Below are positions 2,440 to 39,900 of a stretch of DNA of 64,000 nt, piece by piece (position 1 is the first letter of the stretch; the number at the start of each line of letters is the position of its first letter). The translations under genes were made by a program, and so were the position numbers. The notes under the pieces were generated by a model. The model did not search any database and was not told the DNA's origin. It was given only the letters and a program-made list of their open reading frames with translations. This DNA comes from Malacoraja senta (lineage: Eukaryota), in the NCBI GenBank assembly GCA_038087875.1, contig CM075985.1:7936001-8000000 (forward strand). Direction: 5' to 3'.

Positions 2440-2880
2440 ACGTTATTTTGATCGAATTGAGCCTCTCCTTTTGGTTTGTTCGGACACTAAACCCCCTGAA
2501 ACAGAAATAGCCCGGCCACCCCTACAAAGTTAAACACGTTTTCGTTTACAGCAGAACGCTGTGCAAAATAAAGAAAGGGAACCAATAGCCAATTTTGGGT
2601 GCGCAATGGCAACACGGAAGCAGTTCGGCAGGTCCACCCTTTCACATTTAATAAAATACGACTCACGGATAATTTCTGCAACGGCTGAGGTAACCGCCTT
2701 TTACCGGGTACTTGGGTCACACGCTGCACCATGCCCTGAAAACTGTGTACTTAGTTCTTAACCCGGTCAAATTGCGGTAGAGTTCATTGTGCCCGGGCAG
2801 TTTCAGTTGGGGCCCCGTCGAGACCAGTGTGCCCTACGTGAGGACGTGGACGTTTCACATCCGTATTCACCATGTTAGGG
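2440..2880. promoter_or_regulatory. Second CpG-rich non-repeat segment, possible regulatory element
   Basis: About 25 CpGs in 440 bp, tandem CCAAT boxes, CGGAAG ETS core, donor-like sites on both strands. Confidence 0.35.
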
Positions 2881-3354: not shown

Positions 3355-3595
3355 TGATTGTTTGTAGTGGACGCCAGTCCACAGTCTGTCCCCTGTGATG
3401 GAGACAGAGATCAAAAAAGGGGAGATAGGTTTCAGAGATAGACTCTGATACCTCTCTGCCTCTGATCTCTTACACAAGGATAGACTGCCCTTGATCGTCA
3501 TCACCACCCAACCAGCCTCTGCATCCAACACATCATCCTCCAACATTTCCATGACCTCCAACATGATCCCACCACCGGTCACATCCACCCAGTCT
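3355..3595. mobile_element. Penelope-like fragment (inverted junction piece)
   Basis: Similar to 590-780 and 1020-1060. Confidence 0.6.
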
Positions 3596-3997
3596 TTCTT
3601 TAGGCACCTTTATTCACTGTAGAATCTCCTGTATTAATCAGCTCTTCATTTAAACTTGGTTTAAAAGGAATAAACTGAAGCCATGGTTTGGAAAAGCAGA
3701 AGTTCTCCATGGGAACTTGCTTCTCTTGATCTTTGCTGTAAAACTGATCAAAGGTTGAAGGCTTATTTGCAACTCCTGACTTCCATGCTTGTGGATTGCA
3801 ATGCAGAATTCAGAAATTTACGGAATTTACAAACACGACTTATATCTAATCAACGAAGTAAACAGAATTAAGAGAAATACATTGAGAATGATCACATAGG
3901 AAGATTTGGATGCAAAGGTTTGATCCAAGGTTTATTCAAGAATGTTTATTTGTGTTGAACTGTTTCATTATTTGCAGCTGCCCTCTCCATTAGTCTT

Positions 3998-4111
3998 TCA
4001 CTGAAGAACTGGGCTGTACACAGTCTCCTCCTCCTCCTCCTCCTTTCTAGCTCCCCGTGTCGTTGCCCATTGCAGTTTGGCATAGCAGATCTCCTCCTCA
4101 TTGGTTTCATT
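3998..4111 (-). CDS. Terminal cytoplasmic exon with ITIM (ICYAKL) and ITSM (TVYSPV)
   Basis: Acceptor TTTTGCCTTTTTTGTAG; NETNEEEICYAKLQWATTRGARKEEEEEETVYSPVLQ*; stop TGA at 4000-3998; candidate AATAAA signals on the minus strand at about 3945-3950, 3931-3936 and 3609-3614. Confidence 0.9.
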   Translation of the reverse strand, partial: NETNEEEICYAKLQWATTRGARKEEEEEETVYSPVLQ

Positions 4112-7100
4112 CTACAAAAAAGGCAAAACACAGTGCATTAACTTTTGTCTTTGTCTGAGGTTTAGTGTGCCAACCACTCAGCATGTTCTCAGTAATCTCA
4201 GTCTCAGTCATCAACAAAGTGTTGGGAAGTGCCAGTGAAGCTGCACTGACTCTCTAATAAATGGTTCACTGATGTCCAGTTCAGGTATTGCCAGATTTTC
4301 ACAGCTCCTGTCCTCATCACCTTAATAAATAAATTCAAACTCACGAGCCTGCTTCTGGTCTGGCTACGTGGAAATCACAGAGGGGACAGAGCAACATTTG
4401 CTTTGAATAAGAAACCGTAGAGTACTAAATATACATTCTATAGTTAAAAAATAATTAAATACTAGACTAAGTGGGACCCGTTGGGGGGGGCTGGTCCTGT
4501 CCTCATCTCCTTTCAGAGGTGAGAATATTGACTTTGCAGATGGCCAGGTACGATATTCTGTATCCTTGGCCAGTCAATAGTCAATGGGCATCAAGGAGAA
4601 ATCACTCCAATATGCAATTATACTTCAAAGAAAGCAAAATAGTACTTTACTGCCGATCACTTATACCATCTATCAGATATCTCATCAGGGGTTCCTCCAG
4701 GCAATGTGCTATGCCCAACAATCTTTCGGCACCAAGCGAAAATAACCATTTGCACTGACCATATCCAACAAGTGTGACGGTAACCACCTACCCTTGACAT
4801 TTAATGGCATTACCATTGATGAATCATCTAGTTTTGTTTCATTTATTATTGTTACACTATTTACCAAAAATTCAATAGGATCACCCATTTAATTACTGTT
4901 TCCTCACCATGTGATGCATAGTAGCATCACTAGCCTACCAGTAGCAGGCACAGGTTATTGATTGGGGACGATCAGCCATGATCACAATGAATGGCGGTGC
5001 TGGCTCGAAGGGCCAAATGGCCTCCTCCTGCACCGATTTTCTATGTTTCTATTTCTAATGAGTTGTTTGCTTGATTTTGTAATTGCAATTAAAACGTTGC
5101 AGGAGTATCCATGGTCCACATTAGGCTATTAAACATTGCCATACATACATTCAAACTCACGAGCCTGCTTCTCCTGGTCTGGTTATGTGGAAATCCCAGA
5201 GAATTCTGAGAGGGGACAGACAAACCAACATTTGCTTTGAATAAGTAACCGAAGAGGACTAAATGTACATTATCTTTTTTAAAAAATCAAATATTTACCA
5301 TGTTATTCCATTCAAGGTTCAAAGTTCGATTACTTTGAATTCTTGTTTGCTCTTGCATTCGTTTCCTTTCTATGAGAAATAATAATGAAGTGGAATAGTT
5401 TTAAAGTCTTTGTAGTAAAGTGAACTATAGTATAAGTAAGTAAGTAAGTAAGTTTATTGGCCAAGTATTCACACACAAGGAATTTGCCTTCGTGCTCTGC
5501 CCTCAAGTAACAACATGACATACAGTGACAGTTACGAATGACTCAAAACACTAAACAATAATAATAAAACATTAATGATAAAACACCATTGATCAAGCAT
5601 GTGAATCAACAAAATACCAGATATCTTATGTCATGTTAGGAATATATTATATAGCTTCAAAAGTAGACATATCTAATAATTTACTTCATATTATTATGTC
5701 AATTTAAAAAAGTGGGACAATAGATGCAAACACGGGATTAATGAAGGGAGAATCATGGTGCAGAATCAGGAGAGCACCTAAAAGTTTGCTTTCGGGAAAG
5801 TTGGCTGTGAAGTCACTTACTGCATGCACATTTTATAAGGAAGAGCACAAGAGGGAAAAGGCAAGCTGTTCCTCCACTTATGGAAAGTAAAATGGAAATC
5901 CAGGTACTCCATTTATGATCTGTGGAAAATTGGAATTGTTAAATCACGTTATGCATGGTCCATTTAAACAACTCCCCAGAACAATTTCAAGTTCAATATG
6001 TTTAATCATTTTATTTATAGAAACTTTTTGCAACTATTAATTTCCCTGCACTTTACAATTTATCTCTACCAATTAATCATTACCAAAGTATAGTTGCAGT
6101 ATTAATAATAATTTATAGTTTGCGTCGTCCCAAAGCTGTTTTCCTTTTGTATAAATGTACAAAGTTCTGTACAAATATAATTTAAGTTATCAATCAGAAT
6201 ATTTTGGCTTGGCCAGTTTATAATGCCATTTCACACCGTTTAATTTGATAAAAACTGGAGTTTGATTTCAATTGGTTAAAAACCCATTGGGCCTGAAAAG
6301 CCAATGAAGATCCTGGGAAAAGTTCTCAAAGAGTGAGGCTTCATCAACGTGACACATTTTTGTTGTTCAAAATAATGAAAATACAGATTCAGATTACTGT
6401 TATAGACTCCAGCAGGACACTGAATTTCTTAGTTTGCATGAAGCTCATAGAGTAAACAATAAATACATGAACAATAAATGCAGTGGCAAATGCAAAACAT
6501 GAGAATGGTGTAAAGATTATAGCGCAATCTGAAATAGTACAAATAAAAGTGTAAAATTGGAAAACTGAGTGAGATAGAGTTAAGAATAAGATTACATGGC
6601 AGCACCTCTGGGGAAAGGGGTGTGAAATGAGATGATTAGTTCAGGAGTTGGATAGCTATGGGAAAGTTGTTGTTATTAAGTCCGGATGTCTGAGCTTTCA
6701 AGGTCCAACTGGGAATGACCAGGATGGCATGTTAATGACTGATCTTTTCTGCTTCTATAATATCATCAACATTAACAAGAGTGGGTTAGCAGATTACCAC
6801 ATTCAGCAAAACAAAGGCGTACAGTTTTGTAAAAAGCAAAGTCCACCTGACAAAGACGTGGATCTGAATGGTTCTCTGAACCCCACTTTTTAAAAAGGGA
6901 GGGAGAGAGAAAACGGGGAATTACAGACCAGTTAGTCTAACATCGGTGGTGGGGAAAATTCTGGAGTCAGTTATTAAAGATGGGATAGCAGCACATTTGG
7001 AAAGTGGTGAGTTCATTGGACAAAGTCAGCATGGATTTATGAAAGGTAAATCATGTCTGACGAATCTTATAGAATTTTTCGAGCATGTAACCAGTAGAGT

Positions 7101-10100
7101 GGATAAGGGAGAACCAGTGGATGTGTTATATCTGGACTTTCAGAAGGCTTTCGACAAGGTCCCACATAAGAGATTAGCATACAAACTTAAAACACATGGT
7201 ATTGGGGGTTCAGTATTGATGTGGATAGAGAACTGGATGGCAGACAGGAAGCAAAGAGTAGGAGTAAACAAGTCCTTTTCAGAATGGCAGGCAGTGACTA
7301 GTGGGGTACCGCAAGGCTCAGTGCTGGGACCCCAGCTATTTACAATATATATTAATGATCTGGATGAGGGAATTGAATGCAACATCTCCAAGTTTGTGGA
7401 TGACACGAAGCTGGGGGGCAGAGTTAGCTGTGAGGATGCTAGGAGGCTGCAAGGTGACTTGGATAGGTTGGGTGAGTGGGCAAAGGCATGGCAGATGCAG
7501 TATAATGTGGATAAATGTGAGGTTATCCACTTTGGTGGCAAAAACAGGAAAGTAGACTATTATCTGAATGGTGGCCGATTAGGAAAAGGGGAGATGCAAC
7601 GAGACCTGGGTGTCATGGTACACCAGTCATTGAAAGTAGGAATGCAGATGCAACAGGCAGTGAAGAAAGCAAATGGTATGTTAGCATTCATAGCAAAAGG
7701 ATTTTAGTATAAGAGCAGGGAGGTTCTACTACAGTTGTACAGGGCCTTGGTGAGACCACACCTGGAGTATTGCGTACAGTTTTGGTCTCCTAATCTGAGG
7801 AAAGATATTCTTGCCATAGAGGGAGTACAGAGAAGGTTCACCAGACTGATTCCTGTGTTGACAGGACTTTCATATGAGGAAAGACTGGATAGACTCGGCT
7901 TGTACACGTTTGAATTCAGAAGACTGAGGGGGGATCTTATAGAAACTTACAAAATTCTTAAGGGGTTGGACAGGCTAGATGCAGGAAGATTATTCCCGAT
8001 GTTGGGGAAGTCCAGAACTAGGGGTCACAGTTTAAGGATAAGAGGGAAGACTTTTAGGACCGAGATGAGGAAATCATTTTTTACACTGAGAGTGGTGAAT
8101 CTGTGGAATTCTCTGCCACAGAAGGTAGTTGAGGCCAGTTCATTGGCTATATTTAAGAAGGAGTTAGATGTGGCCCTTGTGGCTAAAGGGATCAGGGGGT
8201 ATGGAGAGAAGGCAGGGATGGGATACTGAGTTGGATGATCAGCCATGATCATATCAAATGGCGGTGCAGGCTCGAAGGGCCGAATGGCCTACTCCTGCAC
8301 CTATTTTCTATGTTTCTATGTTTCTATCTCGGCCCAGGACTGTTACCAAAGTTGATCGTTGACCTAAGGAAATAGGGCTGGGGAGAGGGATGAACCCAAC
8401 CGTGTCCTCATTAACTGAGCGGCTGTGAAGATGGTCGACAGCTTAATGTTTCTTGGTATCTCTATCAGCAGCAACCTAACCTGGTCCCTTGACACTAATG
8501 CAGTGATCAAGAAAGCTCATCAGCGCATTTACTCTCTTATGTGCCTGAGAAGATTCAACATGTGCACGAGGATTTTCTTAAACTTCTATAGATGCACTAC
8601 CGGATGCATTGTGAAGGATGCATCTCAGAATGGTATGGGATCTGCTCTGTTCTTGACCATCTGAACCTGCAGAGAGTAGTGAACACAAAACAGTCCATCA
8701 CAGGACACAAAATGCTGGAGTACTGTAACTCAGCAGGTCAGGCAGCATCTTTGGAGAAGATGGATAGGTGCTGTTTCAGATCAGGACCCTTCTTCAGACT
8801 CACTCACCCTGACCTGCAATGGTTATTTTGTTTACCTGCATCTCCAGTCCATCACAGGCTTGTCTCTTCCTTCCATACAGTCCACCTTCATGGTGCATTG
8901 CATCAGGGAGGCTGGAAGTATTGTCAAATGTACCTGCTGTCCCGGCCATTCCTTTTTCTCCCTTCTACCTTCTGGGAGAGGATAGAGGAGCTTGAAAGCC
9001 CAGATGTCCAGAATTAAGAACCACTTTCCCATTGCTAACAGACTCCTGAAGCAATCATCTATTTTTCAACCCATTTCCAGAGATGCTCTATCTCATTTGA
9101 TTATTCTATTATTGTATTTTAATATTCTTTTACACTATATGGATTTTGCATGACAATCGTGCACGATTCTGCTGTTTTGCACTCGTCATCATATTGTTGT
9201 ATTTATCATTAGTGTATGTTTACTGTTACACTGTGAGCTTCGTATGAACAAGGAACAAGGAACACCCTCTTGGAGATGATAATAAACTAATCTGATCTGA
9301 ACTTGGGACTAAAACTTCTTGTTTTGAAGGCTTTATTATTTATAACTTCCACCACATTTAAAAATCAATCCACCTCTCCATTCAAATGTTGTGCTCAGGT
9401 TTTCCATTTTCTATAACTATTTTCAATTGTTTTGTTTATTTAAGTCCTTTTCTTTCTTGTTATTAGTTTATGAAATTATTTTATAGTGAGATCTTTAATT
9501 TTGTTTACATAAAGTTATTTGATTTCACTTTCCTAGTTAATTTATTTTTAAATGCTTTAACATATTTGAATTATTTCATCAGTATATTCACCTTCCAGAT
9601 CGGGTTTTGTACTTTTCATTTTCTTTAAAAATAACAAGTGCACAAAGTTATTTCTGGATTAGACCTGGTCAGACATATACTGAACTAAAAGATCAATTTG
9701 CTGACCTTTAGAAATAGCACAACACCAAAAACCACAAAACATGTTTTTCATGAATAGAGGAAATGGAAATGTGTGCGGAAAATGTTTGCACACTTTCTAG
9801 GTCATGTAAAGTGACATCGTTTTGTAATTCCTAAATTTAGTTTAGAATCAAATCCAGCTTTCGGATCCATATTCTAATGACATGTTTTACTTTTTAATTA
9901 GAAATTATATCTATATATATAATTTCTAATAAAAAAGTTTAATGTAATTAGAATAAGGATATATATATATATATATATACCTATTTGATGACTCAGACTA
10001 TCCTTGATCGGATATTGATGGCTTTACCTTGCATTAAACATTATTCCCTTATCAAATATCTATCTATACACTGTAAATGGCTCAATTGCAATAAAGTATT

Positions 10101-13100
10101 GTCTTTCTGCTGACTGAATAGCACGCACCAAATGCTTTTCTGTACCTCGGTACATGTGACAATAAACTAAATTAAAACTAAAATAAAAGTTTTGAATTGT
10201 AACAAAGGTAAATGTCGTGGCTGATTCCTACTCAACAATATCTGGAAAACAACAGCATGATGTATACCAGTTCATGTATGGATGGAATGTTTTCCGGGAT
10301 AATGTTTACATGCCATTATGGGAGTTTAAACTTCAGACTTGAATTAGAATGTTGCCAAGTAAATCAAGCTGAAAGTAGAAAGGACATTTCCTGAGCTCTC
10401 AGAATGGTGTGTCACATTGCTTCTACTAGAGTCGGGTTGCAGGATGGCTGAGCAATTTGCGCGGGGTTTGAGTAATTCACAGACACACACACACGATGCA
10501 AACTGGTCCAATCGTCAAGTCAACTGGATCTAAACCACATCTAACAATGAATGACCTGTGGAGGAGGGAACTGTAGATGCTGCTTTTGGATGGAGGGAGG
10601 GAGTGACTGAGGGTAGGTGAAAGGAGAGGGAGGGAGAGGTGAGGGAGGGATTGGGGAGGGGAAGAGGAGAGGGGACCAGGCCTCCCGTGTGACAGGGAGC
10701 CAACAGGTCCCACTTAATCTAGTTTATCACAAAAATTCTGTTAATATGGTATGATTGTGCCATTTGAGAAGGTTCTGGTAAGTGAGGAGCTACCTATATG
10801 GCAGAAATGAATGGCCTTGCCCTCCCCAAATCCATTGGTGGCCATGTGATGCTACGACTGTCTGTTCCATCGGACTGTATATGCTGGCATAATATTCATA
10901 ATGTGCATGCTATCCATGTGTTGAGGTATCATATGTTCAGCTTAAAGTCCTTGTTTCCACTTGCCAACTTTATGTTTATTGCGGATGCTCAAGCACTGAA
11001 GACAGTGGATCACCAAAGAATAAAGGTGTTAATACTGCTGCCAGAATACTGGGCATGCTTGTGCATGCACTGGCTATTAAGGGAATGATTTTTTTACCAG
11101 TTGTGGTACATCCCTGTGTTGATATGTGAAGCCTGCAATGCGGCATGGGTGCAGTCAATGACATTCAGCAGCATTGAGAAGACAACAACCATTCCAAATG
11201 TGTGTGCTCAATCCACTTGCTTGTCCCTAGCAAGAACAAATATGTAATCTGCTGGAAGACAATGGTGACTTCCCTTAAACAAAAGTGGATGGCAAATCAG
11301 GAAATAACATGAATATTTCCAGCTCTGGTTGGAAAGGAACCCAACGTGTATAAATTTGTTATCATGGAGCCCTTAGCAGCCACAGGCAAAGCAGCTCACA
11401 CAGGGCATCAGATCCTACCCAAACAAAGGACACTCATGGCAGTATTTTGCAGTCACAGTGTTTACATGTAGTTTATCATAATGAATGTTTTTGGGTTAAG
11501 AATTCTACATTCGGATAGAGAGCACTGATACGCTTCCTCTTAATTCTTCAACTTGCAGCAGCCGGAATATTAACCTGTTAATTTCCAGAATTGAATGTTA
11601 AACTCCAGAAGTCTGGTGACTTTGCTATAAACATTTCTTTCCCCAGTATGCATGGTTCTTCACCAAGAATCCAGCGTGTGAACTCTGATTCTCATTCCTG
11701 TCACATAATTATAAATTCTTGTTCATTTCCACAAAGGAGGCACAACTTTATTTCTTGATATCATTTTGTTGATATCAGGAAATAAAACTGTGCCTCCTTT
11801 GAGGGTGTCATAAATCAGGAAGAGCAGAGATTGTATGACAACTAAGTAATTCAAGTGAAAAACAACAATTAGCTAGCCAGAAAAATAAGGTGTGCCTGTT
11901 AAAAAGTAAATTTGGCCTTCTTTATCTCTATCACACTTTCTTTATATCTAGTAAAGCATTTATTTTACAACACATTCCAGCAGGGGCTTTGTTGGCCTTC
12001 CTGCTGAATTGATTCTATGATTCCATCCTACCTTGAGCAACTGTATGAACATCAATGATGATAGTACCATTTAGCTCAGTCTGTGATGCTGGATGTTGAA
12101 CTACACATGTGAATTCAGTGGAGTTGGAGCAATTTTCTGTGGAGATGCTAAATGTTTCAGTGTAGTTATAGGTTCCATTGGGATTGGTTGCGTTGCTTAT
12201 ACTGATGAGCCTGAAGGTGAGACAGGTTGGTTGTATCCAAAATTTAATAATATTTGGATAAAACCCATATGCTAAGCATGTAATGTTAATTGATGGTGAA
12301 GAAGAAATCTTGTCGTAAGATTCCAGGAGCCAAAGAGAAGGACAAGCTGGTTATAAAAAAAAGAGATAGATTAGCAATGGTATCATTCTGAAGTGGCATA
12401 TCATTCTTCAAAGATATCCAAATTACATAGGTACTAAATCAGGTTCATATTTTATTACATGAACAGTACTAATTATAAATATACATTTCTTGAAATCAGT
12501 TATGATCTTTATATGCAGACTGAACTCCTGAATATTTTCTGTTGGCTTAATCTACAAATACATTTGGAGCTATCTTGCAGTATTATAATTATACATAATG
12601 TTTTGCTCTTGTTTCCTCATTCTAAAGCATTCATCCCCATCTCTGCCATCCTATTCCCACTATTGTTCCAATCCATGAAGGACTGCCATATAACTAGCCA
12701 CTTTCACACATTTCCAGCCTAACTCGAATACTATGTAGACACAAAATGCTGGAGTAACTCAGTGGGACAGGCAGCATCTCTGGAGAGAAGGAATGGATGA
12801 CGTTTTGGGTCGAGACCCTTCTTCAGACCTATGTATACAGTCATGTGCTTTTTTTTTTATACTCATTCACTTTTATTTTAATTGGCCTTCTCTGACAGTG
12901 GGTCTTGATCATGTTGACTATGCTGTTCCACGATCATTCTTGGCCTCTTGCTTTGGTTGTATCAGCCTTTTCAAATTTCCTCTTCCATCGATGTCAATTG
13001 AATGAGTAAGTTAACCACTATGTTCTCACACAATACTACAACCAACAACCAAATCCTAAATGCTTCCTCACTCCACATAAGAGGTGTCATTTAATACAAC

Positions 13101-16100
13101 AATCTAGTTATCATTTTCAATCCATTCTAATGGTTAATCAGGGATGAACTGAATTAAAGTTATTTCTTTGTTTATCTTCAAGGTAGATGTGTTTGCTGCA
13201 GCCTTCAGTAGATGCAAATCTACTTTCATTTTTTCTTGTCATAAATATGCCATTTGGATTTTTGTAGATCTTAATCAGGAAAATTGTCAGTTTTGTTCAT
13301 AAAGATTCTCTTTTCTCTTCTGTTTCTTCAAAGCTGATCCATAAGCAGTAGAGAATTGACCATTAAGCACATACCATAATTTAGACAATAAAGTACCAAT
13401 TAAATATTGACACAATTTATACATTCGGCAACAAAATGTAAAAAAATCCGATGCTTGTCAACCATGATGGTATGTGCAAAATGTACAGCACAAATAAAAC
13501 ATAGCTTTTATACAAAGGACAAAAGGTCTCAGCTGTGCTGTAAATTTAAAGCAAAATATTTTGTTACCATGTGTAAGAAGGAACTACAGATGCTGGTTTA
13601 AACCAAAGATAAACACAAAAAACTGGAGTAACTCAGGCAGTTTCTCTGCAGAGAAGGAATGTGTGACGTTTCGGGTCAAGAAGTAGGGCCTTGACCCAAA
13701 ACATCAACTATTCCTTCGCTCCAAAGATGCTGCCTGTCCTGCTGAGTTACTCCAGCTTTTTGTGTCTATTTTGTAACCATGATGTGTTCGTTGTGTCAAT
13801 TAAATTCCTGTCTCTAGTATAACAGCATCTGTAGTTCTGGTCTGATTTGGCTAGAAGCCTTGACTATGCCCGATTCTACTGTGCTTCCTCTCTTTGCTGA
13901 TAAATTAACGAAAGGATCTCACTATCAATCTAGATCAAGCACAACTACACTGTCCATTTGAAACACATTTGGCCTCAAGTCTAATTCAGACCACTCTACT
14001 GCTGTAAGAACAAGCATGACTGATTTTAGTCCTAAATTTGTGCCTTTTGATGAAATTAAGTTAAACTTCCTTTATTTCTCACAACAGTGAAAGATATGAA
14101 TAAAATAAAGTCCTTAATAAGATAAATATCATTTGGAAGTATAGATAGTTATCATTGAAATTGATAAATCATGTTACCTTCAATTTTCACACAGACACAA
14201 AAAGTAATTTCAAATATTTCCTTGTTCTGACAAAAGGATAAAGATATGAAATATTTATTCTGTTTCCTTTTCTACAGACTCTGCCTACTGCTATAGCCAG
14301 TGTTTCCTGTTTTTATTACAGTTATCTCAAAAGTAGGTCCAACCTGCCAAAAATGTGTGTCCTAAACCTTCCTAATCTGGACCACTAAGGACAAATTAAG
14401 AACTCCAGCCAGCATGCTGAATTAGATCAGCTAACTCACTGCAGTGCGATGACCATATCTGACACATCTCTCATATAACTGACACAACTGTACAAAGTTA
14501 ATTGCTGCAAAAGTTTGCATTAATGTTCCAAGTAAAACTGCCACAAAACTTTTGAAAGAATTAAAAAATATAATTACCAGTTACATTCAGTAGGATGCCA
14601 TTTCCCTTGTCTGTTAAAGTTGGCGGTGGTGCCAACCGAATCACCTCACAGCAGTGGATTCCATTGTCACTGACTTGAACATTGATAATTGTTAAGATGA
14701 ATGCCTTCAATGTAGAATTATGCCTTACGCAATATCGAGAATGAGAAACCCAAGGTTTATCGGTGGATAGGTTTGCGATTATCGTTGAAGAATATGGGCC
14801 ATCATTGCTTAAAAACCACTTTACTGTAAATCTTGATAGATTACGCATGGAATAGGAACAATGTAATGAGATCGAGTGTCCTTTTACAATGGTAAGCGTA
14901 TCAGGTTGTTGTAAATCATTATTTATCTTGTGTACAGCTGAGGAGAGATTCAGAAAATGTAATTTAAATGCCGTATTTCAAAGTTAATCTTCCCCGCAGT
15001 TTTAATTGTAATAAAGGTCACTGTGCTTGTTTGAACCTCCTCTGCGATTTCCACTTGAGTGGTCAACACATTAAATTTCTTTGTTAAAGTAGAGAAACTC
15101 ATATGTTAACAATTCATATTAGTACATTTGCAGCTGTAATTGGAGTACAATTTTAACACTGCTCCTGCATTTTTTTAAATGTAAACAGGGGAATTTTAAA
15201 CATTCAAATACCATAGAACAGAATTGCTTTCAAGATATATTCTATCTCCACTGCAAGAACAGTACTTCCCAAAACAAATCCATTAGGTACCATGTAACAA
15301 CATAATAAGGCATGGAATGGAAAATATTGCCAGCTGTAGCCATTTTATGAACTGAGACTATTATGATATTTTAACAAAATGTCACCAGATAGAAACAAAT
15401 GAACAAATCAAGCAGTATAAGAACTATGAGTTATATAAAGGATAAATGCACAAGGGGTCTCAACACCAGGGGATCATAGGTTTACATGGAATACCACATT
15501 TCTGAATTACAATGAATGTTTTGGAAAGTTTAAATTAATGCTCTAAGTTTAAAAGCTCAAATGGCTGTGGCATGCTACATCATGAAATATAAAAGTGTCA
15601 ATATGTATTAGTCATTTCAACTTAGGAAGCAAAAACACAATTGCGAATGTTCAAGATGGTTTGAAAAGAAAGTAATAGCAAACATTCAGTGTTGCTAACC
15701 CATTTCAATTTCATCAAGTAAATTCAACACAAAATGCACTAACAAAAGTAGAATCACATCAATTTTGCTATCATTCACTTTAACTGTTACATTTCATGCA
15801 ATTCACAACATATAGTATGAACTTAATGCCTATCCAAATTTGATAAAAAATTAAAGAACACAACGTTGGAAGAACTCAGTGGATCAAGCAGCATTTTTGG
15901 AGGCGAAAAAAGATGGTACTATACCAGTATACTATACCAATATTACCATATTAAAAGAACATTTGGACAGTTACATGAATAGGATAGGTTTAGAAGGATA
16001 TGGGCCAAATGCAGGCAGTTGGGACTAGTGCAGTCAGCGTGAGTAAATTAAGCCAAAGGGCCTGTTTCCAGGCCGTATGACTATGGAAAAAAGTGTAGGT

Positions 16101-16353
16101 CAATGTTTTGGTTCGAGGCGCTGATCAGGACTGATTTAGAATTTCAACATGAAATATTGACTTACACTTTTTGTCTTCTGAGATGCTGCTTGATCACCAA
16201 GTTCTTTCAGCACTCTTTTTTAAATTCTTGATTCCAACATCAGCAGCCTCCATTCACTTGGTGAAATCAAATTCTGTATAAAGTATTACACTTGGGTCTC
16301 ATACCTGCACAAGGTATTAACAGCTGTAGGATAATGTAAAATGATGTCTCCAT
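3998..16353 (-). CDS. Non-rearranging V(J)-C1 Ig-superfamily type I membrane receptor with ITIM+ITSM tail (7 coding exons, 350 aa)
   Basis: Exons 16353-16305 (49 nt), 14937-14578 (360), 12346-12032 (315), 5919-5821 (99), 5369-5299 (71), 5205-5161 (45) and 4111-3998 (114) total 1053 nt. All introns are GT-AG, intron phases are 1,1,1,1,0,0, and there is no internal stop. Protein: METSFYIILQLLIPCA-A-VHKINNDLQQPDTLTIVKGHSISLHCSYSMRNLSRFTVKWFLSNDG...DNGIHCCEVIRLAPPPTLTDKGNGILLNVT-A-CPSLWLL...ITCLAYGFYPNIIKFW...FTCVVQHPASQ...VAQ-D-HKWSTWISILLSISGGTACLFPLVLFLIKCAC-K-RKRMQ...ICYAKLQW...TVYSPVLQ*. Confidence 0.9.
4345..4363 (-). other. Diverged duplicate of cytoplasmic exon 2; candidate 19-nt frameshifting micro-exon
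   Basis: 4330-4435 is a diverged copy of 5150-5270. The original acceptor is deleted, a new TAG acceptor lies at 4366-4364, and the GTGAGT donor is retained. Confidence 0.5.
5161..5205 (-). CDS. Cytoplasmic exon 2, NSLGFPHNQTRRSRL
   Basis: Acceptor GTCCCCTCTCAG, donor C|GTGAGT, 45 nt, phase 0-0. Confidence 0.78.
5299..5369 (-). CDS. Cytoplasmic exon 1, (K)RKRMQEQTRIQSNRTLNLEWNNM
   Basis: Acceptor ATTTCTCATAG, donor G|GTAAAT; the only stop-free reading frame is the one set by the TM exon. Confidence 0.8.
5821..5919 (-). CDS. Transmembrane exon, (D)HKWSTWISILLSISGGTACLFPLVLFLIKCAC
   Basis: Acceptor TTTTCCACAG, donor A|GTAAGT, 99 nt, phase 1-1, uncharged hydrophobic span followed by KRKR across the next junction. 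Confidence 0.88.
6715..9300 (+). mobile_element. Degenerate Rex1/Babar LINE, interrupted by a CR1 (6883-8327) and a Penelope tail (about 8705-8845)
   Basis: SLN|I...ELIVDLRK frame joins across the CR1; VKMVDSLMFLGISISSNLTWS...KKAHQRIYSL...NFYRCT; LPSGR-like motif near 8970. Confidence 0.7.
6883..8327 (+). mobile_element. 5'-truncated CR1 (HER1-like) LINE, young copy
   Basis: RT ORF 6946-8229 in one frame with a single nonsense codon at 7705-7707; GVPQGSVLGP, KFVDDTKL; 3' UTR with (CTATGTTT)n tail. Confidence 0.95.
9957..9979. repeat. (AT)n microsatellite
   Basis: Direct reading. Confidence 0.9.
12032..12346 (-). CDS. Ig C1-set domain exon
   Basis: Acceptor TTTTTTTTATAACCAG; C1 signatures ITCLAYGFYP, IKFW, NPNGTY, FTCVVQHPAS; donor G|GTAGGA; 315 nt, phase 1-1; missed by the ORF track because it has no ATG. 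Confidence 0.93.
14578..14937 (-). CDS. Ig V-set domain exon with germline-joined J-like G strand
   Basis: Acceptor TCTCTCCTCAG; Q-P A-strand, B-strand Cys (LHCSY), C-strand Trp (VKWF), LTIINVQVSDNGxxC, GNGILLNV; donor G|GTAATT; 360 nt, phase 1-1. Confidence 0.93.
16305..16353 (-). CDS. Leader (signal peptide) exon of V-C1 receptor, METSFYIILQLLIPCA
   Basis: ATG in strong context (AACATGG), hydrophobic 16-aa stretch, 49-nt phase-1 exon typical of Ig/TCR leaders, donor G|GTATGA. Confidence 0.75.
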
Positions 16354-16549
16354 GTTACTGTAATCACCAGCTAGATGATGAAACTCTCAGCATCCACAGC
16401 GCAGCTCACCCTATTATTTCTTGTAAATCATCAGATGATCCGTTTCTTTACATACAAAGATACAGTGTGTTGAAGCGTACGAGTATAATGGTTGCAAGTT
16501 TTGCTAGACCACTAATTCCTCTTGGCTTTTATGCAAAGGCATTGGGCAC

Positions 16550-16605
16550 ATGTGATTGGTATAATTTTTGTACGTCACGGTCTTTGCCTCTGATCTTTAC
16601 CACAA
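16550..16605 (-). promoter_or_regulatory. Candidate proximal promoter motifs of the V-C1 receptor
   Basis: CCAAT (16555-16559), CRE-like TGACGTA (16571-16577) and RUNX TGTGGT (16599-16604) cluster 200-250 bp upstream of the ATG; short motifs that may occur by chance. Confidence 0.25.
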
Positions 16606-17084
16606 AATATAGATTGAGAATGCTAAAGAAACTTTTAGTGTGGCTAAACTGGTAACTTTTTAAGCAAATTGCATGAAAAAGATTTACATTTTTCAATGCA
16701 GCATAATTGAAAATGTAATATTTAAACATACCAATTAATGCTAGGGACTCAGAATTTCACATGTACAAATTGGTGGGTTGATCTTTACATGCAGGTTTTT
16801 TTTGTTCAGACAAGCTCATACGATTTAAACGGGTACCATGCCAAATTGTCCCCCAAAAAAGACAATCAGACTCTGAAAGTTTACATAAGACCAACTTAAC
16901 TTGTGTGCCAGTAACTGTTGATTCAATTATGCTTCCATAGAAAAGCTGTGAGGTACAATGGAAGATGTGTGAAGAAAGATCTCACCAGAGATTTAGAGTA
17001 GCACTTTGCATGAACCTACTCCTAATTCGTTTTATTTCACTGTAGCTTTTTCCCCCTTGTTCCTAGTGTTCAGTTTTAATTTAG

Positions 17085-19274: not shown

Positions 19275-19780
19275 TCAGAAAGCCTTTGATAAGGTGCCAC
19301 ACGTGAAACTGCTAAGGAAGGTGAGAGCCCATGGTATCAAAGGGCAGATACTAGCATGGACTGCAGGTTGGCTGAATGGCAAAAGGCAAAGACTGGCAAT
19401 AAAGGGGGCTTTTTGTGGTTGGCCGCCAGTGGAGTTCTGCAGGGGTCGATGCTGAGGCCGTTACTCTTCACGATGTATATTAATGATTTGGAAGAGGGGA
19501 TTGAAGGCTTTGTGGCCAAGTTTAAGGATGATACCAAAATAGGTGAAGGGGCAGGTAGTGTGGCGAAAGCAGGGACTCTGCAGAAAGACTTGGACAGGTT
19601 GGGAGAGTGGGCAGAGAAATGGCAGATGGAATATAGTGTAGCAAATTGTGCAGGTGTGCATTTTGGTAGTAGGAATAAAGGCGTAGACTATTTTCTAAAT
19701 GGGGAGAGAATCCAGGAATCGAAGGTGCAAAGGGACTTGAGAGTGCTGGTGCAGGATTCCCATAAGTTAATCAGCAAATT
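19275..19780 (+). mobile_element. CR1 RT fragment
   Basis: GVLQGSMLRPLLF...KFKDDTKIG...W..KWQM. Confidence 0.88.
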
Positions 19781-21419
19781 AATCGTGTACATATATCTAC
19801 TCTGAATTCCATCAGAAAACTTTCACTCTATAATCAGGGCTAGTTTTCACTGGTGACTTATTTTAGCAGTATGAAGGATTTCAAGATAATCAGGTAGCAC
19901 AGTGACCTGTTATTTTTTTAAACATTCTGTTAAATTGTAAACCTGAACAATGACATTGAAACTCCAGGTTTGGAAACGTACTGAAACCAGCATTAATGAG
20001 TAAGGGAATTAACAGATATACATTGCCGAATCATCCTGAGGTGGCTGATTGTGGGAGTAGATGTTTGAACAAAAAAAAATCCAGGAGCCAGAATTTGAAG
20101 AACTGGAAGAAATTCTAAGGGGGAATAAGGATATGGCAAAGGAGTTAAACAAATACTTTGTGTCTATGACTAATTCCCCTTGTGAAGTGGTGCTTTACAA
20201 ACTTGAACTGGTTCAGATATTTCCACAATACAGTTGTGAAGGGGAGGAGTGGATCATTTCAATTTAATGTCAACAAAGGAACATTAATATATTTCTGGGG
20301 CAGGATGGTGTAAGTCTTGGAGTGAAGGTTGCAGGTAATGATGTTCCCTTGCAATTGATGCTCTGCTCCTTCCCAGTAGCAGAGGTATCGGGTTTGGGAA
20401 GTGCTGTTGGACAGCCTAGGGGAGCAACAGAAATACATTACATAGATGACACACGCTGCAGCAACTTTGTCACTGCTGGAGTCAATTAAATTTTGGGGTG
20501 TTGGATGGGGTAGTAATCAAGGGAGCTGCTTTTTGTAGGCAGTGTTAACATTATTGGGTGTTGTTGGAACTGCAGTCATCAAGACAAGTGGAGAGTATTC
20601 CATCACATATATCTGACATGTCTTTCAGATGGTGGAAAAACTTTGTAGTGCTCTTGTAATCACAGTGTTTATATGACCAAACCATTTTAGTTACTGGTAG
20701 GTTGTGATCCCGAGGATGTTGATGGTGAGCCACTCAGCAATGGTAATATCAATGGTAAATAATTGGAACCTCTTGCTGAAGAACACTATGGACTTGCACT
20801 TTTGGCACCAATGTTACTTGCCACTCATCAGTTTATGTCTAATGTTGCTCAGATTTGCAGCATGCAGCATGGACTAATTCACTTGTCAAGAATGAAATTC
20901 ACTTGTGAATGAAATTATAAATGGTATGACCAGAAGGGAACATTCTCACCTCTGAGCTTGTCGTGGAAGGAAAATATTTGCTGAAGCAGCTGATGATGGG
21001 ACTAGGACATTGACTTGAGGAACGTCTGCACTGACATCCTAGGATGATTGATTTCCAGCATCCACAATCATCTTCCCCGGTGCAAGATAAAACTCTAGTC
21101 ATTGAAATGTTGACTTCAATTTTACTAGAGCTTGTAGTTCCCACATTCAGTAAAATGCAGTCTTGATATTAAGGGTGAAGATAGATACAAAAGGCTGGAG
21201 TAACTCAGCAGGTCATGCAGCATCTGTGGAGAAAAGTATTAGGTGATGTTTCAGGTCGAGACCCTTCTTCAGATATTAAGGGCTGTCACTTATACCCTGA
21301 TGCATATAATTTAGATCTTTGGGTTATATTTTGATCAAAGACTGGGGACAACTGCTTCAGTTAAACTTAAATTTGGATGAAGCAAGATGGCATTTGGAGA
21401 GTAACTGCGCTTGATTAAA

Positions 21420-36900: not shown

Positions 36901-39900
36901 GGTTTAATTGCCCCCTTCATGCAGGTATAAGAGAGCTCTCAGTGCCAGGTCTTTCCTCCAGTCTTTCCATCACCTTTGGAAACTTTTATTGCTGTTTATC
37001 AACATGAGGACCAAAGTTGTGCCAATGAAAGTCAAAGAAGCCATTATGAGACTGAGAAACAAGAATAAAACTGTTAGAGACATCAGCCAAACCTTAGGCT
37101 GACCAAAATCAACTGTTTGGAACATCATTAAGAAGAAAGAGAGCACTGGTGAGCTTGCTAATCGTAAATGGACTGGCATGCCAAGGAAGACCTCCACAGC
37201 TGATAACAGAAGAATTCTCTCTATAATAAAGAAACATCCTCAAACACCTGTGCGACAGATCAGAAACACTCTTCAGGAGTCAGGTGTGGATTTGGCAATG
37301 ACCACAGTCCGCAGAAGACTTCACAAACAGAAATACAGAGGCTACACTGCAAGATGCAAATCACTGGTTAGCCGCAAAAATAGGATGGCCAGGTTACATT
37401 TTGCCACGAAGTACTTACAAGAGCAATCACAGTTCTGGAAAAAGGTCTTGTGGACAGATGAGATGAAGATTAACTTATATCAGAGTGATGGCAAGAGCAA
37501 AGTATGTAGGAGAGAAGGAACTGCCCAGTATCTAAAGCATACCACCTCATTTGTGAAACACGGTTGTGGGGGTGTCATGGCCTGGGCATGTCTGGCTGCA
37601 GAAGGTACTGGCACACTTATCTTCATTGATGATACAACTGCTGATGGTAGTAGCATAATGAATTCTGAAGTTTATAGACACATCCTATCTGCTCACGTTC
37701 AAACAAATGCCTCAAAACGCATTGGCCAGCGGTTCATTCTACAGCAAGACAATGATCCCAAACATATTGCTAAAGCAACAAAGGAGTTTTCCAAAGCTAA
37801 AAAATGGTAAATTCTTGAGTGGCCAAGTCAGTCATCCGATCTGAACCCAATTGAGCATGCCTTTTATATGCTGAAGGGAAAACCGAAGGGGACTAGCCAA
37901 AACAAGCATAAGCTAAAGATGGCTGCAATAAGGGCCTGGCAGGGCATCACCAGAGAAGACACCAAGCAACTGGTGATGTCCATGAATCGCAGACTTCAAG
38001 CAGTCAATGCATGCAAAGGATATGCAACAAAATACAAAATACTAAATATAACTATTTTCATTTACATGACATTGCTGTGTCCCAAACATTATGGTGCCTT
38101 GAAATGAGGAGACTATGCATAAACACTGCATATGTTGGTTACTTTCCCGAGGCAGTGTGAAGTGTAGACGGAGATGCCAGTTTGTGTGATGGCCAGGGAC
38201 GTGATCACGCCTCTCTGTATTTTCTTGCACTTGGGTAGAGGAGTGACCACATCAAACTGTAATGCATCAGCATTGGATGCCGTCTATAATGTTCCTGTAA
38301 AAGTAGACTCATTGGAGACATGCTAAATTTCCTTAGCCTTCTGAGAAAGGAGGTGCATTGATGTGTGTTCATGACTGCAGCATCAATGTGTTTTGGACCA
38401 GGACAAATTGTTTATCCCTAGGAGCTTGAAGCTCTCAACCATTTCTACCTGGGCACCATCGATGCTGATTAGGAAGTGCACTCCATCCCACTTTCTGAAA
38501 TCGATGAGCATCTCCTTCATGTTGATGATGTTGATTATTGTTTGACACCAACTACTATCTTCCTCCAGTACCCCTTTTTGTCATTGGTTGAGTTCCAACC
38601 CGCTACAGTGGTATCATATGCAAACTTGTAAATGGAGTTAAAGCATAATTTAGCTGCACATTCGTAAGTATATAGGGAATATAATGGGCTGATTGCACAG
38701 CCTTGTGGGACACCGGTGATGAGAATTATTATGGAGGAGTGTCACCTATTCTTGCTGATTACAGCCCGCGGAACAGGAAATCAAGAATCCAGTTACAGAG
38801 AGCGGTGCTAAGCCTGGGCCCAAGGAGTTTGGAGATGAGTTTGGTTGGAATTATTGTGTTGAAGACAGAACTAGTCATTGAGTCATAGAGTGATACAGTG
38901 TGGAAACAGGCCCTTCAGCCCAACCTGCCCACACCGGTCAACATGTCCCAGCTACACTAGTCCCACCTACCTGCGCTTAGTCCATATCCCACCAAACCTG
39001 TTATATCCATGTACTTGTCATAACTGTTTTTTTAAACGTAGGTATAGTCCCAGCCTCAACTACATCCTCTGGCAGCTTGTTCCATACACCCACCACCATT
39101 TGTGTGAGAAAGTTACCCCTCAGATTCCTATTAAACCTTTTCCCCTTCACATTGAACCTATGTCCTCTAAAGTCTGACATAGCCCAGATGATCCAGGGAT
39201 GAGTGTAGGACCAGGGAGGTGGCATCTGCTCTGTACTTGCTGCGGTGGTGGGTAAATTGCAGTGGGATTAAGGCTGCCTAGAAAGCTGGAGTTGATGTTT
39301 TCCATGACCAGCCTCTCAAAGCACTTGATAATGGTGGGTGTCAGAGCTGTCATTTGGTAAAAGGCACATCATAAATGTAAGATGTTGCAGACTAGCTTAT
39401 TGTTTGTAATATACTATTGATTTATGTATTATAAATGTAATTATGCTATTGATTTAGAATCTATGGTGGAAGATAAATTTTTTTAATGGCTGATTTTAAA
39501 ATCTATATCGTGCATAAGTTTAAAGGAACTATTGCTATTCTATGGATATTCCCATGGATATTTGTTCTTTAAATTTAGGTATAGCGATGAATAATAGTCT
39601 CGGTGTGGCACCGATAATCAAAGCTGAGCCAACAAGGGGGCTTGTGGATGAATCAGTCAAGCTTGAGATTGCACATTTAGTTCCAAACCAACAGGTTACA
39701 CTGCACTCGCAGCTTCTGTCTGAGGATGACGATAGGTGGATGGCATATGCCCACTACATCAGTGATTCGGAGGGGATCGTCCGAGGTTCGTACAGCTAAA
39801 TTACACCATTCACCTTTTGCTTTTTACTGAGGAGTTTTGCATTGCTAATACTTGGGACAATGTTATGCATGACAGATATTTTGAACATAGAGAGGAAATA

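What the first reader, a model, noticed from the sequence alone, without database searches (positions are those of the whole stretch)
3998..16353. Intact non-rearranging V(J)-C1 antigen-receptor-like gene with an inhibitory ITIM+ITSM tail
Seen in sequence: seven phase-compatible exons give a 350-aa protein with leader, V domain, C1 domain, uncharged TM and a two-tyrosine tail. The J-like G strand is germline-fused to V in one exon and no RSS was found. Established knowledge: C1-set domains are largely confined to Ig, TCR, MHC, B2M, tapasin, SIRP and B7-H6-type proteins. A V-C1 ectodomain is the layout of a TCR or Ig light chain, and non-rearranging VJ-C1 genes (PRARP/VJC1-type) have been proposed as relics of the antigen-receptor precursor. 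Inference: this is a chondrichthyan inhibitory receptor of that architecture, either a PRARP/VJC1 relative or an undescribed family. Only part of one exon appears in the ORF track.
Basis: partly seen in the sequence, partly recalled or inferred. Interest (0 to 1): 0.92.

Follow-up and report, generated by a model that had tools for sequence, protein, structure and literature searches.

The report
Skate inhibitory V-C1 immune receptor gene
This is a real, intact skate gene for a cell-surface immune "brake" receptor whose tip carries a CTLA-4-like binding loop on top of an antibody-type constant domain; it belongs to an old, still unnamed family found from sharks to turtles that was not seen in mammals.

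Summary
The gene is real and lies on the minus strand at 16353-3998. Six GT-AG exons give a 335-aa protein, not seven exons and 350 aa. The parts are a leader, a germline-joined V(J) domain, a C1-set domain, an uncharged TM, and a tail with ITIM (ICYAKL) and ITSM (TVYSPV). Two polyadenylated transcript contigs from a sister skate (about 95% identical, same locus) match the V, C1, TM, cyt1 and last exons block for block. Orthologues in at least nine sharks and rays share the architecture. No RSS was found. Pfam scores V-set and C1-set in all 16 family members tested. The F strand, FG loop and G strand (YxCx6PPPx5GxG) hit only CTLA-4 and then CD28 at the top of the PDB. The published CD28 family is single-V, SIRP has three domains and UrIg has four, so it fits none of them. 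More distant PPP-V plus C1 relatives exist in chimaera, gar, teleosts, amphibians, turtles and alligator, all with automatic names only. PRARP membership could not be tested. Inhibitory signalling is inferred from motifs. The scan also noted similar VJ-C1-ITIM genes elsewhere in this genome (s1-140092, s1-140180).

The parts
16305..16353 (-). Exon 1: start codon (16353) and a 17-residue hydrophobic leader, phase-1 donor CAG|GTATGA
   Evidence: Sequence read, coordinates. The leader resembles the Narcine orthologue's leader. It is not covered by the sister-species transcript contigs, which use other 5' exons.
14578..14937 (-). Exon 2: complete V(J) domain, 360 nt, phase 1 to 1. The F strand, FG loop and G strand lie at 14656-14579, PPP at 14629-14621 and GNG at 14605-14597.
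   Evidence: Pfam V-set E 4.9e-14. Matches the transcript contig block at 95.3% over 360 nt. The 38-aa FG segment hits CTLA-4 and then CD28 at the top of the PDB. Motif coordinates.
12032..12346 (-). Exon 3: C1-set constant domain, 315 nt, phase 1 to 1. Hallmarks are the TC..GFYP motif after the B-strand Cys at 12284-12237 and FTCVVQHPAS at 12113-12084.
   Evidence: Pfam C1-set 28.7 bits, above the cut-off of 21. All 16 family members tested match C1-set. PDB hits are IgM C-mu4, IgY, UrIg2, CD276 and SIRP constant domains. Transcript block 94.3% over 316 nt.
5821..5919 (-). Exon 4: short stalk, uncharged transmembrane helix (5902-5834) and juxtamembrane KCAC, 99 nt, phase 1 to 1, donor GCA|GTAAGT
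   Evidence: Transcript block 99% identical. Aligns to the orthologues' TM.
5299..5369 (-). Exon 5: basic cytoplasmic segment, 71 nt, phase 1 to 0
   Evidence: Transcript block. Homologous to the ERKKIQEQKRIQ...NNM segment of the orthologues.
3998..4111 (-). Exon 6, coding part: acidic tail with ITIM ICYAKL (4090-4073), ITSM TVYSPV (4024-4007) and stop at 4000-3998
   Evidence: Transcript block. Both motifs are conserved in the orthologues and remain intact in the sister species.
3931..3997 (-). 3' UTR with AATAAA at 3950-3945 and 3936-3931. The sister-species mRNA carries its poly(A) tail from about 3931.

Best explanation
The locus encodes a conserved, germline-joined (non-rearranging) type I membrane receptor of 335 aa. 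It has a signal peptide, one V(J) domain, one C1-set domain, an uncharged transmembrane helix and a tail with two tyrosine motifs.

Shown here: the exon structure, the domain types, the fused VJ exon without RSS, and orthologues that follow the elasmobranch species tree.

Inferred mechanism: the membrane-distal V domain binds a cell-surface ligand. It probably does so through its CTLA-4-type FG loop (PPP followed by the GxG bulge), which in CTLA-4 and CD28 is the B7-binding site. A B7-like ligand is therefore the leading guess. The heavily glycosylated C1 domain would lift the V domain off the membrane and may support dimerisation. After ligand engagement, Src-family kinases would phosphorylate ICYAKL and TVYSPV. 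The 19-22-residue spacing of the two tyrosines suits the tandem SH2 domains of SHP-1 or SHP-2, which would then dampen activation in the leukocyte that carries the receptor. In short, it would work like PD-1, SIRP-alpha or CEACAM1 on the inside and like CTLA-4 at its tip, on an antigen-receptor-like V-C1 scaffold.
For: - Gene model: six open, phase-compatible GT-AG exons.
- Transcripts: two polyadenylated contigs from a sister skate align to exactly the V, C1, TM, cyt1 and last exons. They share 15 of the 17 listed C1-exon differences with that species' collinear genomic contigs, which indicates the same locus.
- Domains: V-set and C1-set by Pfam for the window and for all 16 family members tested.
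- Structure: the AlphaFold model of the sister ectodomain has pLDDT 86.9 and two beta-sandwich domains. Its nearest folds are TCR and Ig light chains and B7-H6, nectin-3, tapasin and SIRP-alpha.
- No rearrangement: no RSS found and V and J lie in one exon.
- CTLA-4-type loop: the top 22 PDB hits of the 38-aa segment are CTLA-4 or its relatives and CD28. The motif matches the YxCx6PPPx4/5GxG signature described for CTLA4 and CD28X in PMC11599192.
- Conservation: full-length orthologues in Narcine, Mobula, Hemitrygon, Pristiophorus, Heptranchias, Heterodontus, Scyliorhinus and Stegostoma keep the PPP and GxG motifs, the C1 hallmarks, the TM and both tyrosine motifs. The tree follows the batoid and shark groupings.
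- Transmembrane helix: it has no charged residue, so there is no sign of pairing with ITAM adaptors.
Against: - No RNA from the window's own species could be examined.
- The sister-species transcripts skip the leader exon and use odd 5' exons. They also carry a 2-nt insertion in exon 5 that truncates the tail before the tyrosines.
- dN/dS against the sister species is high: 0.54 for V, 1.02 for C1 and 0.76 overall, on only 36 substitutions. This fits either fast immune-gene evolution or relaxed constraint.
- Over the whole V domain, the PDB matches are Ig lambda, TIM-4 and TCR-alpha before PD-1 and CTLA-4. The CTLA-4 likeness is therefore local to the FG loop and G strand, and the E-values for that short segment are marginal (0.03-0.1).
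- Ligand, dimerisation, phosphorylation and phosphatase recruitment are all untested.
Confidence: 0.75

Rival explanations
1. It is the cartilaginous-fish member of the PRARP family (Fu et al. 2019, J Immunol 202:1992). [quoted passage not shown] This concerns classification and is compatible with the mechanism above.
For: The gene has a germline VJ exon with a J-like G strand and an ITIM tail. The wider family occurs in bony fish, amphibians, turtles and crocodilians, and no mammal was identified among the best hits whose source was looked up. This fits the reported PRARP range as I recall it. Two deep lineages appear in the tree, reminiscent of a gene pair. PRARP is listed among joined-VJ IgSF genes in PMC11599192 and PMC10751288.
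Against: No PRARP sequence or paper could be obtained, and no hit carries that name. No bird sequence was identified among the hits. From memory only, chicken PRARPs have a single V domain.
Confidence: 0.3
2. It is a SIRP-family gene, as NCBI's automatic names for the Scyliorhinus and Narcine orthologues suggest. On this reading it would be a CD47-type 'don't eat me' receptor on myeloid cells.
For: Automatic names read 'tyrosine-protein phosphatase non-receptor type substrate 1-like'. SIRP-alpha appears among the Swiss-Prot fold matches. SIRP C1 domains are among the PDB hits of the C1 exon. The tail is tyrosine-based and inhibitory in type.
Against: There is one C1 domain instead of two, and two tail tyrosines instead of four. 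The C1 exon scores better against IgM, IgY, UrIg2 and CD276 than against SIRP. The family profile's best PDB match is UrIg2. One SIRP-like V (P0112, judged by its sequence; its source was not looked up) appears only at E 2e-4, far below the PPP-loop relatives. SIRP V domains lack the PPP loop. Other orthologues are auto-named Ig kappa-like, Ig lambda-like or CEACAM1-like, so the names carry no weight.
Confidence: 0.05
3. It is a B7/butyrophilin-like ligand rather than a receptor. V-C1 is also the B7 layout, and the tail tyrosines would be incidental or serve reverse signalling.
For: B7-H6, CD80, PD-L1, CD276 and butyrophilins are among the fold matches. CD276 is among the C1 sequence hits. Five of the 16 relatives also match the CD80-like C2-set_2 model.
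Against: The V domain has the J-like GxGT.L.V G strand and the receptor-side PPP loop of CTLA-4. The two tyrosine motifs and their spacing are conserved across sharks and rays.
Confidence: 0.05
4. In this species the locus is an unexpressed or decaying copy. The open frame would be a recent relic and the real function would be carried by paralogues elsewhere in the genome.
For: dN/dS is about 0.76 against the sister species. The sister species' transcripts are frameshifted and lack the leader. Similar genes are noted elsewhere in this genome. No same-species RNA was found.
Against: All six exons are open, with canonical splice sites and every conserved motif intact. The locus is orthologous to single genes conserved at 42-62% V-domain identity across sharks and rays. 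The sister species still transcribes, splices and polyadenylates it.
Confidence: 0.07

Closest known systems
CTLA-4 / CD28 family, including CD28X (Quiniou et al. 2024, PMC11599192)
   Same: The FG (CDR3-like) loop has PPP followed by a GxG bulge, at the spacing YxCx6PPPx5GxG. The F-FG-G segment hits only CTLA-4 and then CD28 at the top of the PDB. The paper gives this same signature for CTLA4 and CD28X. Like PD-1, the tail pairs an ITIM with an ITSM. CD28X, like this family, is found in cartilaginous fish, gar, turtles and crocodilians and is absent from mammals.
   Different: The family is defined as having a single extracellular V domain, whereas this protein adds a C1 domain. It has no YxxM or EYEDM motif and no YxxxxT motif in the TM. 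Whole-domain similarity to CTLA-4 and PD-1 is no better than to Ig or TCR V domains.
SIRP-alpha (PTPNS1)
   Same: It has a non-rearranging VJ-type V followed by C1-set domain(s), an uncharged TM and a tail that recruits SHP phosphatases. It is also the source of the automatic names of some orthologues.
   Different: SIRP has V-C1-C1 and four tail tyrosines, and its V has no PPP loop. Sequence matches to SIRP are weaker than to Ig, UrIg2 and CD276.
UrIg / UrIg2, the shark non-rearranging antibody-like genes (PMC12227049)
   Same: Both are elasmobranch genes with a germline VJ followed by C1. The UrIg2 V-C1 is the best solved-structure match of the family profile, at 83 bits in one stretch against about 55 for Fab heavy chains.
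   Different: UrIg and UrIg2 have three constant domains. UrIg is a secreted liver product. The present gene has one C1, a TM and an ITIM/ITSM tail. UrIg V domains lack the PPP loop in the aligned region.
PRARP (Fu et al. 2019)
   Same: Both are non-rearranging VJ IgSF genes with an ITIM, are absent from mammals, and have been proposed as relics of the antigen-receptor precursor (cited).
   Different: The relationship is unknown because sequences and paper are not available here. From memory, the chicken genes have a single V domain.
Ig light chains and TCR chains
   Same: The ectodomain is V-C1 with a J-like G strand. The best Foldseek matches in the PDB are TCR and light chains. Several orthologues are auto-named 'Ig kappa or lambda light chain-like'.
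   Different: V and J lie in one exon and no RSS is present. The J motif lacks the leading F or W. The gene is a single copy within this 64-kb window, and it has its own signalling tail.
Teleost NITRs
   Same: They have a VJ-type V domain, a second Ig domain and ITIM tails, and they do not rearrange.
   Different: From general knowledge, the NITR second domain is I-type (V/C2), not C1, and NITRs form large multigene clusters known only in bony fish. This was not tested here.

Membership tests
CD28/CTLA-4 family (as defined in PMC11599192) | Single extracellular IgSF V domain | tested here: not met
   A C1-set exon follows the V exon in the genome, in the sister-species mRNA and in all orthologues. 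The definition is quoted.
CD28/CTLA-4 family (as defined in PMC11599192) | P-[P/L]-P motif in the CDR3-like loop, followed by GxG in the G strand for the CTLA4 and CD28X type | tested here: met
   The sequence reads HCCEVIRLAPPPTLTDKGNG. The motif is conserved in the orthologues. The segment's top PDB hits are CTLA-4 and CD28.
CD28/CTLA-4 family (as defined in PMC11599192) | Family-type cytoplasmic motif (YxxM or EYEDM, or the PD-1 ITIM-ITSM) | tested here: inconclusive
   No YxxM or YEDM motif is present. An ITIM plus ITSM pair is present as in PD-1, but such pairs occur in many unrelated receptors.
CD28/CTLA-4 family (as defined in PMC11599192) | Conserved synteny (the CD28/CTLA4/ICOS cluster, or the pudp-sts-anos1 block for CD28X) | not testable with these tools
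   The window holds no other recognisable gene, only transposon ORFs. The catshark locus has no neighbour within 10 kb.
SIRP | V-C1-C1 ectodomain | tested here: not met
   There is only one C1 exon between V and TM in the genome, the mRNA contigs and the orthologues.
SIRP | SIRP domains are the nearest relatives by sequence | tested here: not met
   For the C1 exon, IgM scores 2e-11, UrIg2 2.6e-9 and CD276 5e-8, against SIRP-gamma at 1.8e-6. The profile's best match is UrIg2. One SIRP-like V (P0112, judged by sequence only) scores E 2e-4.
UrIg / UrIg2 | VJ domain followed by three C-type domains | tested here: not met
   There is one C1 and then a TM.
PRARP | Orthology to the chicken PRARP genes by sequence and synteny | not testable with these tools
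   The paper and sequences are not held, and no database hit carries the name.
PRARP | Non-rearranging VJ exon with a J-like G strand, plus a cytoplasmic ITIM | tested here: met
   These features are shared with several other families.
Rearranging antigen receptors (IgL, TCR) | Separate V and J segments flanked by RSS | tested here: not met
   V and J lie in one 360-nt exon. There are 0 RSS-like sites in 3500-17000 and 1 in the whole window.
Rearranging antigen receptors (IgL, TCR) | V domain followed by a C1-set domain | tested here: met
ITIM-bearing inhibitory receptors (functional class) | (I/V/L/S)xYxx(L/V/I) in the tail, a second tyrosine motif about 20-30 residues away, and an uncharged TM | tested here: met
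   ICYAKL and TVYSPV have tyrosines 22 residues apart, and the TM has no D, E, K or R. The features are conserved in the orthologues.
ITIM-bearing inhibitory receptors (functional class) | Phosphorylation-dependent recruitment of SHP-1, SHP-2 or SHIP and inhibition of cell activation | not testable with these tools
   This needs biochemistry.

The most novel reading that the evidence does not exclude
This V-C1 family may be the surviving sister or ancestral form of the CD28/CTLA-4 co-receptor family. On this reading, a CTLA-4-type ligand-binding V domain still sits on the antigen-receptor-type C1 domain, and the single-V co-receptors arose from it by loss of the C1 exon. Gnomon already predicts V-only isoforms in a stingray. 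That would physically link the 'second signal' receptors to the non-rearranging VJ-C1 stock from which Ig and TCR are thought to derive.
Probability: 0.15. Interest if true: 0.8.

Novelty: new variant of a known kind. Interest (0 to 1): 0.55.

Why it matters
Two questions in comparative immunology meet here: where antigen receptors came from, and where checkpoint receptors such as CTLA-4 and PD-1 came from. Non-rearranging VJ-C1 genes are sought as relics of the gene that the RAG transposon invaded (PMC12227049, PMC10751288). The 2024 survey of the CD28 family found only single-V members and could not trace the family's origin (PMC11599192). This gene puts a CTLA-4-type loop on a V(J)-C1 scaffold with a PD-1-like inhibitory tail. 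It is conserved across sharks and rays and has relatives up to crocodilians. It is therefore a concrete, testable candidate for a link between the two groups, and a likely additional checkpoint receptor in non-mammalian vertebrates. The practical value is modest. The orthologues are already predicted in public annotations but carry misleading automatic names (SIRP-like, Ig kappa-like, CEACAM1-like). If the family turns out to be PRARP, the novelty shrinks to new cartilaginous-fish members plus the V-C1 and CTLA-4-loop observation.

Tried and rejected
- RNA evidence in the same species: both run searches returned only runs of unrecorded type. Those laid (X1-X4) had even depth over introns, so they are genomic DNA. 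The single read-laying run therefore gave no splice data. It did show that organism B is collinear and about 5% diverged.
The 45-nt candidate was rejected on transcript, orthologue and repeat evidence.
- An alternative TM candidate at 11872-11726 was rejected, because the transcripts and orthologues use 5919-5821.
- PRARP: four literature searches and two look-ups by id found neither the paper nor any sequence.
- The Ohta 2019 and UrIg 2023 papers are not held.
- Profile and single-sequence word-index searches did not reach beyond close relatives and gave no curated names.
- Synteny: the window contains no other Ig exon or recognisable gene, and the catshark locus has no neighbour within 10 kb.
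- Fold searches in three libraries confirm a generic V-C1 pair but do not discriminate between families.
- CD28X identity was rejected: there is no EYEDM motif and a C1 domain is present.

Full report
**What is there**

The gene lies on the minus strand. Stop-to-stop frames and direct reading of the sequence give six exons with canonical GT-AG borders:

| Exon | Coordinates | Length | Content |
|---|---|---|---|
| 1 | 16353-16305 | 49 nt | start codon and leader |
| 2 | 14937-14578 | 360 nt | V(J) domain |
| 3 | 12346-12032 | 315 nt | C1 domain |
| 4 | 5919-5821 | 99 nt | stalk and TM |
| 5 | 5369-5299 | 71 nt | cytoplasmic exon |
| 6 | 4111-3998 | 114 nt with the stop | tail |

Joined, the exons read open for 335 aa.

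**Independent support for the model**

An exhaustive HMMER search with the V exon returned close homologues. One of them, P0152, is encoded without introns on two Logan contigs of 1354 and 1266 nt from two runs. BLASTN of these contigs against the window gives blocks that coincide with the V, C1, TM, cyt1 and last exons at 92-99% identity. The longer contig ends in a poly(A) tail just past AATAAA. These are therefore mRNAs.

The contigs carry 15 of the 17 C1-exon differences that read laying listed for the collinear genomic contigs of 'organism B'. They thus come from the orthologous locus of a sister skate that is about 5% diverged. Four of the five junctions are confirmed in that way. The leader-to-V junction rests on phase, splice signals and similarity to the Narcine leader.

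**The extra exon**

The only good candidate is 5205-5161. It is absent from both mRNA contigs and from every orthologue. It also sits in a roughly 145-bp direct repeat of 4325-4451 within the same intron. I therefore reject it. The same repeat contains the 19-nt 'micro-exon' of note s1-141082, which the transcripts also skip.

**Domains**

- Pfam calls exon 2 V-set (E 4.9e-14).
- Pfam calls exon 3 C1-set (28.7 bits, cut-off 21), ahead of the C2-set models.
- All 16 family ectodomains tested match both V-set and C1-set.
- The C1 exon's best PDB matches are IgM C-mu4, IgY, UrIg2, CD276 and SIRP constant domains.
- The C1 exon has the C1 hallmarks: the TC..GFYP motif after the B-strand cysteine, and FTCVVQH on the F strand.
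- An AlphaFold model of the sister ectodomain (pLDDT 86.9) shows two beta-sandwich domains.
- Foldseek finds TCR and light chains first in the PDB, and B7-H6, nectin-3, tapasin and SIRP-alpha in Swiss-Prot. This is a generic V-C1 pair.

**Non-rearranging status**

The V framework, the CDR3-like loop and the J-like G strand (GNGILLNVT) are contiguous in one exon. A heptamer/nonamer scan found no RSS-like site in 3500-17000.

**The tip of the V domain**

Over its whole length the V domain is no closer to the CD28 family than to Ig or TCR V domains. The 38-aa F strand, FG loop and G strand behave differently. When searched alone, the top 22 hits among 177,635 PDB sequences were CTLA-4 from several species (one entry is unnamed but CTLA-4-like) and then CD28. 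E-values were 0.03-0.4, as expected for so short a query.

The motif is YxCx6PPPx5GxG. The 2024 survey of the CD28 family gives exactly this signature for CTLA4 and CD28X. That survey, however, defines all nine family members as single-V proteins. CD28X also has an EYEDM tail, which is absent here.

**The tail**

ICYAKL fits the ITIM consensus and TVYSPV fits the ITSM consensus. The two tyrosines are 22 residues apart and the TM is uncharged. Both motifs are conserved in the orthologues. Outside the skates the second motif reads V/IxYxxV, which is an ITIM rather than an ITSM.

**Family and age**

Full-length orthologues with the same architecture exist in Narcine, Mobula, Hemitrygon, Pristiophorus, Heptranchias, Heterodontus, Scyliorhinus and Stegostoma. 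Their names are automatic and inconsistent: SIRP-alpha-like, Ig kappa- or lambda-like, CEACAM1-like, uncharacterized.

A maximum-likelihood tree of the ectodomains gives these groupings (root at midpoint only):

- The window protein pairs with the sister skate (100/100).
- It lies inside a batoid group (93/92).
- Shark orthologues, gar, and a tetrapod group of axolotl, Bombina, turtle and alligator (93/97) sit beside it.
- A second, deeply separated chondrichthyan lineage is present (Hemitrygon, Pristis, Callorhinchus).

PPP-loop V domains with C1-like second domains also turn up in salmon and carp, and a single-V form occurs in bichir. I identified no mammalian or bird sequence among the best 144 representatives, though only about thirty of them were looked up or read. 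The family is therefore probably as old as jawed vertebrates, and no mammalian member was seen.

The scan's first stage also noted two similar VJ-C1-TM-ITIM genes on other pieces of this genome. I did not examine them.

**Selection and integrity**

Against the sister species, dN/dS is 0.54 for V, 1.02 for C1 and 0.76 overall, on 36 substitutions. This is high, but the counts are small and such values are common for immune receptors.

The sister-species mRNAs have a 2-nt insertion in exon 5. It shifts the frame and stops 17 residues after the TM, although the downstream ITIM/ITSM exon is still intact in its own frame. They also start with sequence homologous to window 2859-2702, joined to an alternative exon inside intron 1 instead of the leader. 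The window's own copy has none of these defects.

**How it probably works**

The architecture is shown; the function is inferred. By analogy with established ITIM/ITSM receptors (PD-1, SIRP-alpha, CEACAM1, PECAM-1; general knowledge), ligand engagement would lead to Src-kinase phosphorylation of the two tyrosines. The tandem SH2 domains of SHP-1 or SHP-2 would then dock and dephosphorylate nearby activation signals. In CTLA-4 and CD28 the PPP loop is the B7-binding site, so a B7-like ligand is the leading guess. The C1 domain may act as a spacer or a dimer interface. Because the C1 and TM exons are both phase 1-1, skipping either keeps the frame. Gnomon predicts such soluble or V-only isoforms in catshark and stingray.

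**Classification**

The gene fails a defining feature of each named family that could be tested:

- CD28 family: defined as single-V, but this protein has V plus C1.
- SIRP: V-C1-C1 with four tail tyrosines, and SIRP is not the nearest relative by sequence.
- UrIg and UrIg2: three constant domains.
- Rearranging receptors: RSS are required and none is present.

By profile, the nearest solved structure is the V-C1 of shark UrIg2. PRARP (Fu et al. 2019) could not be tested, because neither the paper nor sequences are available here. What I recall of it, a single V domain and an ITIM in chicken, is memory and not evidence.

I found no description of this V-C1 family in the searchable literature. 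That library lacks most subscription journals.

**Verdict**

I rate the finding as a new variant of a known kind. It is a non-rearranging VJ-C1 inhibitory receptor distinguished by a CTLA-4-type loop. It is already present in public annotations but is unnamed and uncharacterised. Interest is moderate to good (0.55). [quoted passage not shown]

Noticed in passing
window 2702-2859 (-) and 16172-16304 (-); L001:27-306: Both sister-species mRNA contigs begin with about 158 nt homologous to window 2859-2702. That stretch lies downstream of this gene's poly(A) site and is followed there by a GT donor. In the mRNAs it is joined to an alternative exon inside intron 1 (16304 to about 16172, donor GTAAGT) and then to the V exon, skipping the leader. 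The resulting ORF has no signal peptide. A back-splice, a rearrangement in the sister species, or a copy of the exon upstream in that species could explain it. The cause is unexplained.
   Followed up: partly
window 5299-5369 (-); L001:1081-1153: The sister species' transcripts, from two runs, carry a 2-nt insertion in cytoplasmic exon 1. It causes a frameshift and a stop 17 residues after the TM, so that form lacks the ITIM/ITSM tail. The last exon is still intact in its own frame. This may be a tail-less allele, early decay, or an assembly error.
   Followed up: partly
window 4325-4451 and 5141-5285: A roughly 145-bp segment is duplicated directly within intron 5 at 84-94% identity. The other holds the 19-nt 'micro-exon' of note s1-141082. 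Neither is in the sister-species mRNAs.
   Followed up: yes
window 6946-8229 (+), 19356-19805 (+), 37178-37810 (+): Transposable-element ORFs are present. There is a reverse transcriptase (RVT_1, E 4e-28) inside intron 3 of the gene, on the opposite strand. A weaker RT fragment lies at 19.4 kb and a Tc1/mariner-type transposase HTH domain at 37.2 kb. No other cellular gene or Ig exon was detected in the 64 kb.
   Followed up: partly
window 12662-12993, 13492-13823, 15816-16147: Contig word-depth in four genomic runs of two skate species reaches tens of thousands to millions at these places, with many joints and loose ends. These are very high-copy interspersed repeats in introns 1 and 2.
   Followed up: no
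P0025, P0085, P0067 (Hemitrygon, Pristis, Callorhinchus): Cartilaginous fish have a second, deeply diverged lineage of PPP-loop V plus C1 membrane proteins. In Hemitrygon it is on a different chromosome-size contig, and its tails lack the ICYAxL...VYSxV pair. In axolotl, a V-C1-V-C1 gene and a V-C1 ITIM/ITSM gene have adjacent accession numbers on one contig.
   Followed up: partly
P0147 (Scyliorhinus isoform X3), P0002 (Hemitrygon isoform X4): Gnomon predicts in-frame isoforms lacking the TM exon (soluble V-C1) or lacking both the C1 and TM exons (V joined directly to the tail). Both are possible because these exons are phase 1-1, as they are in the window.
   Followed up: no
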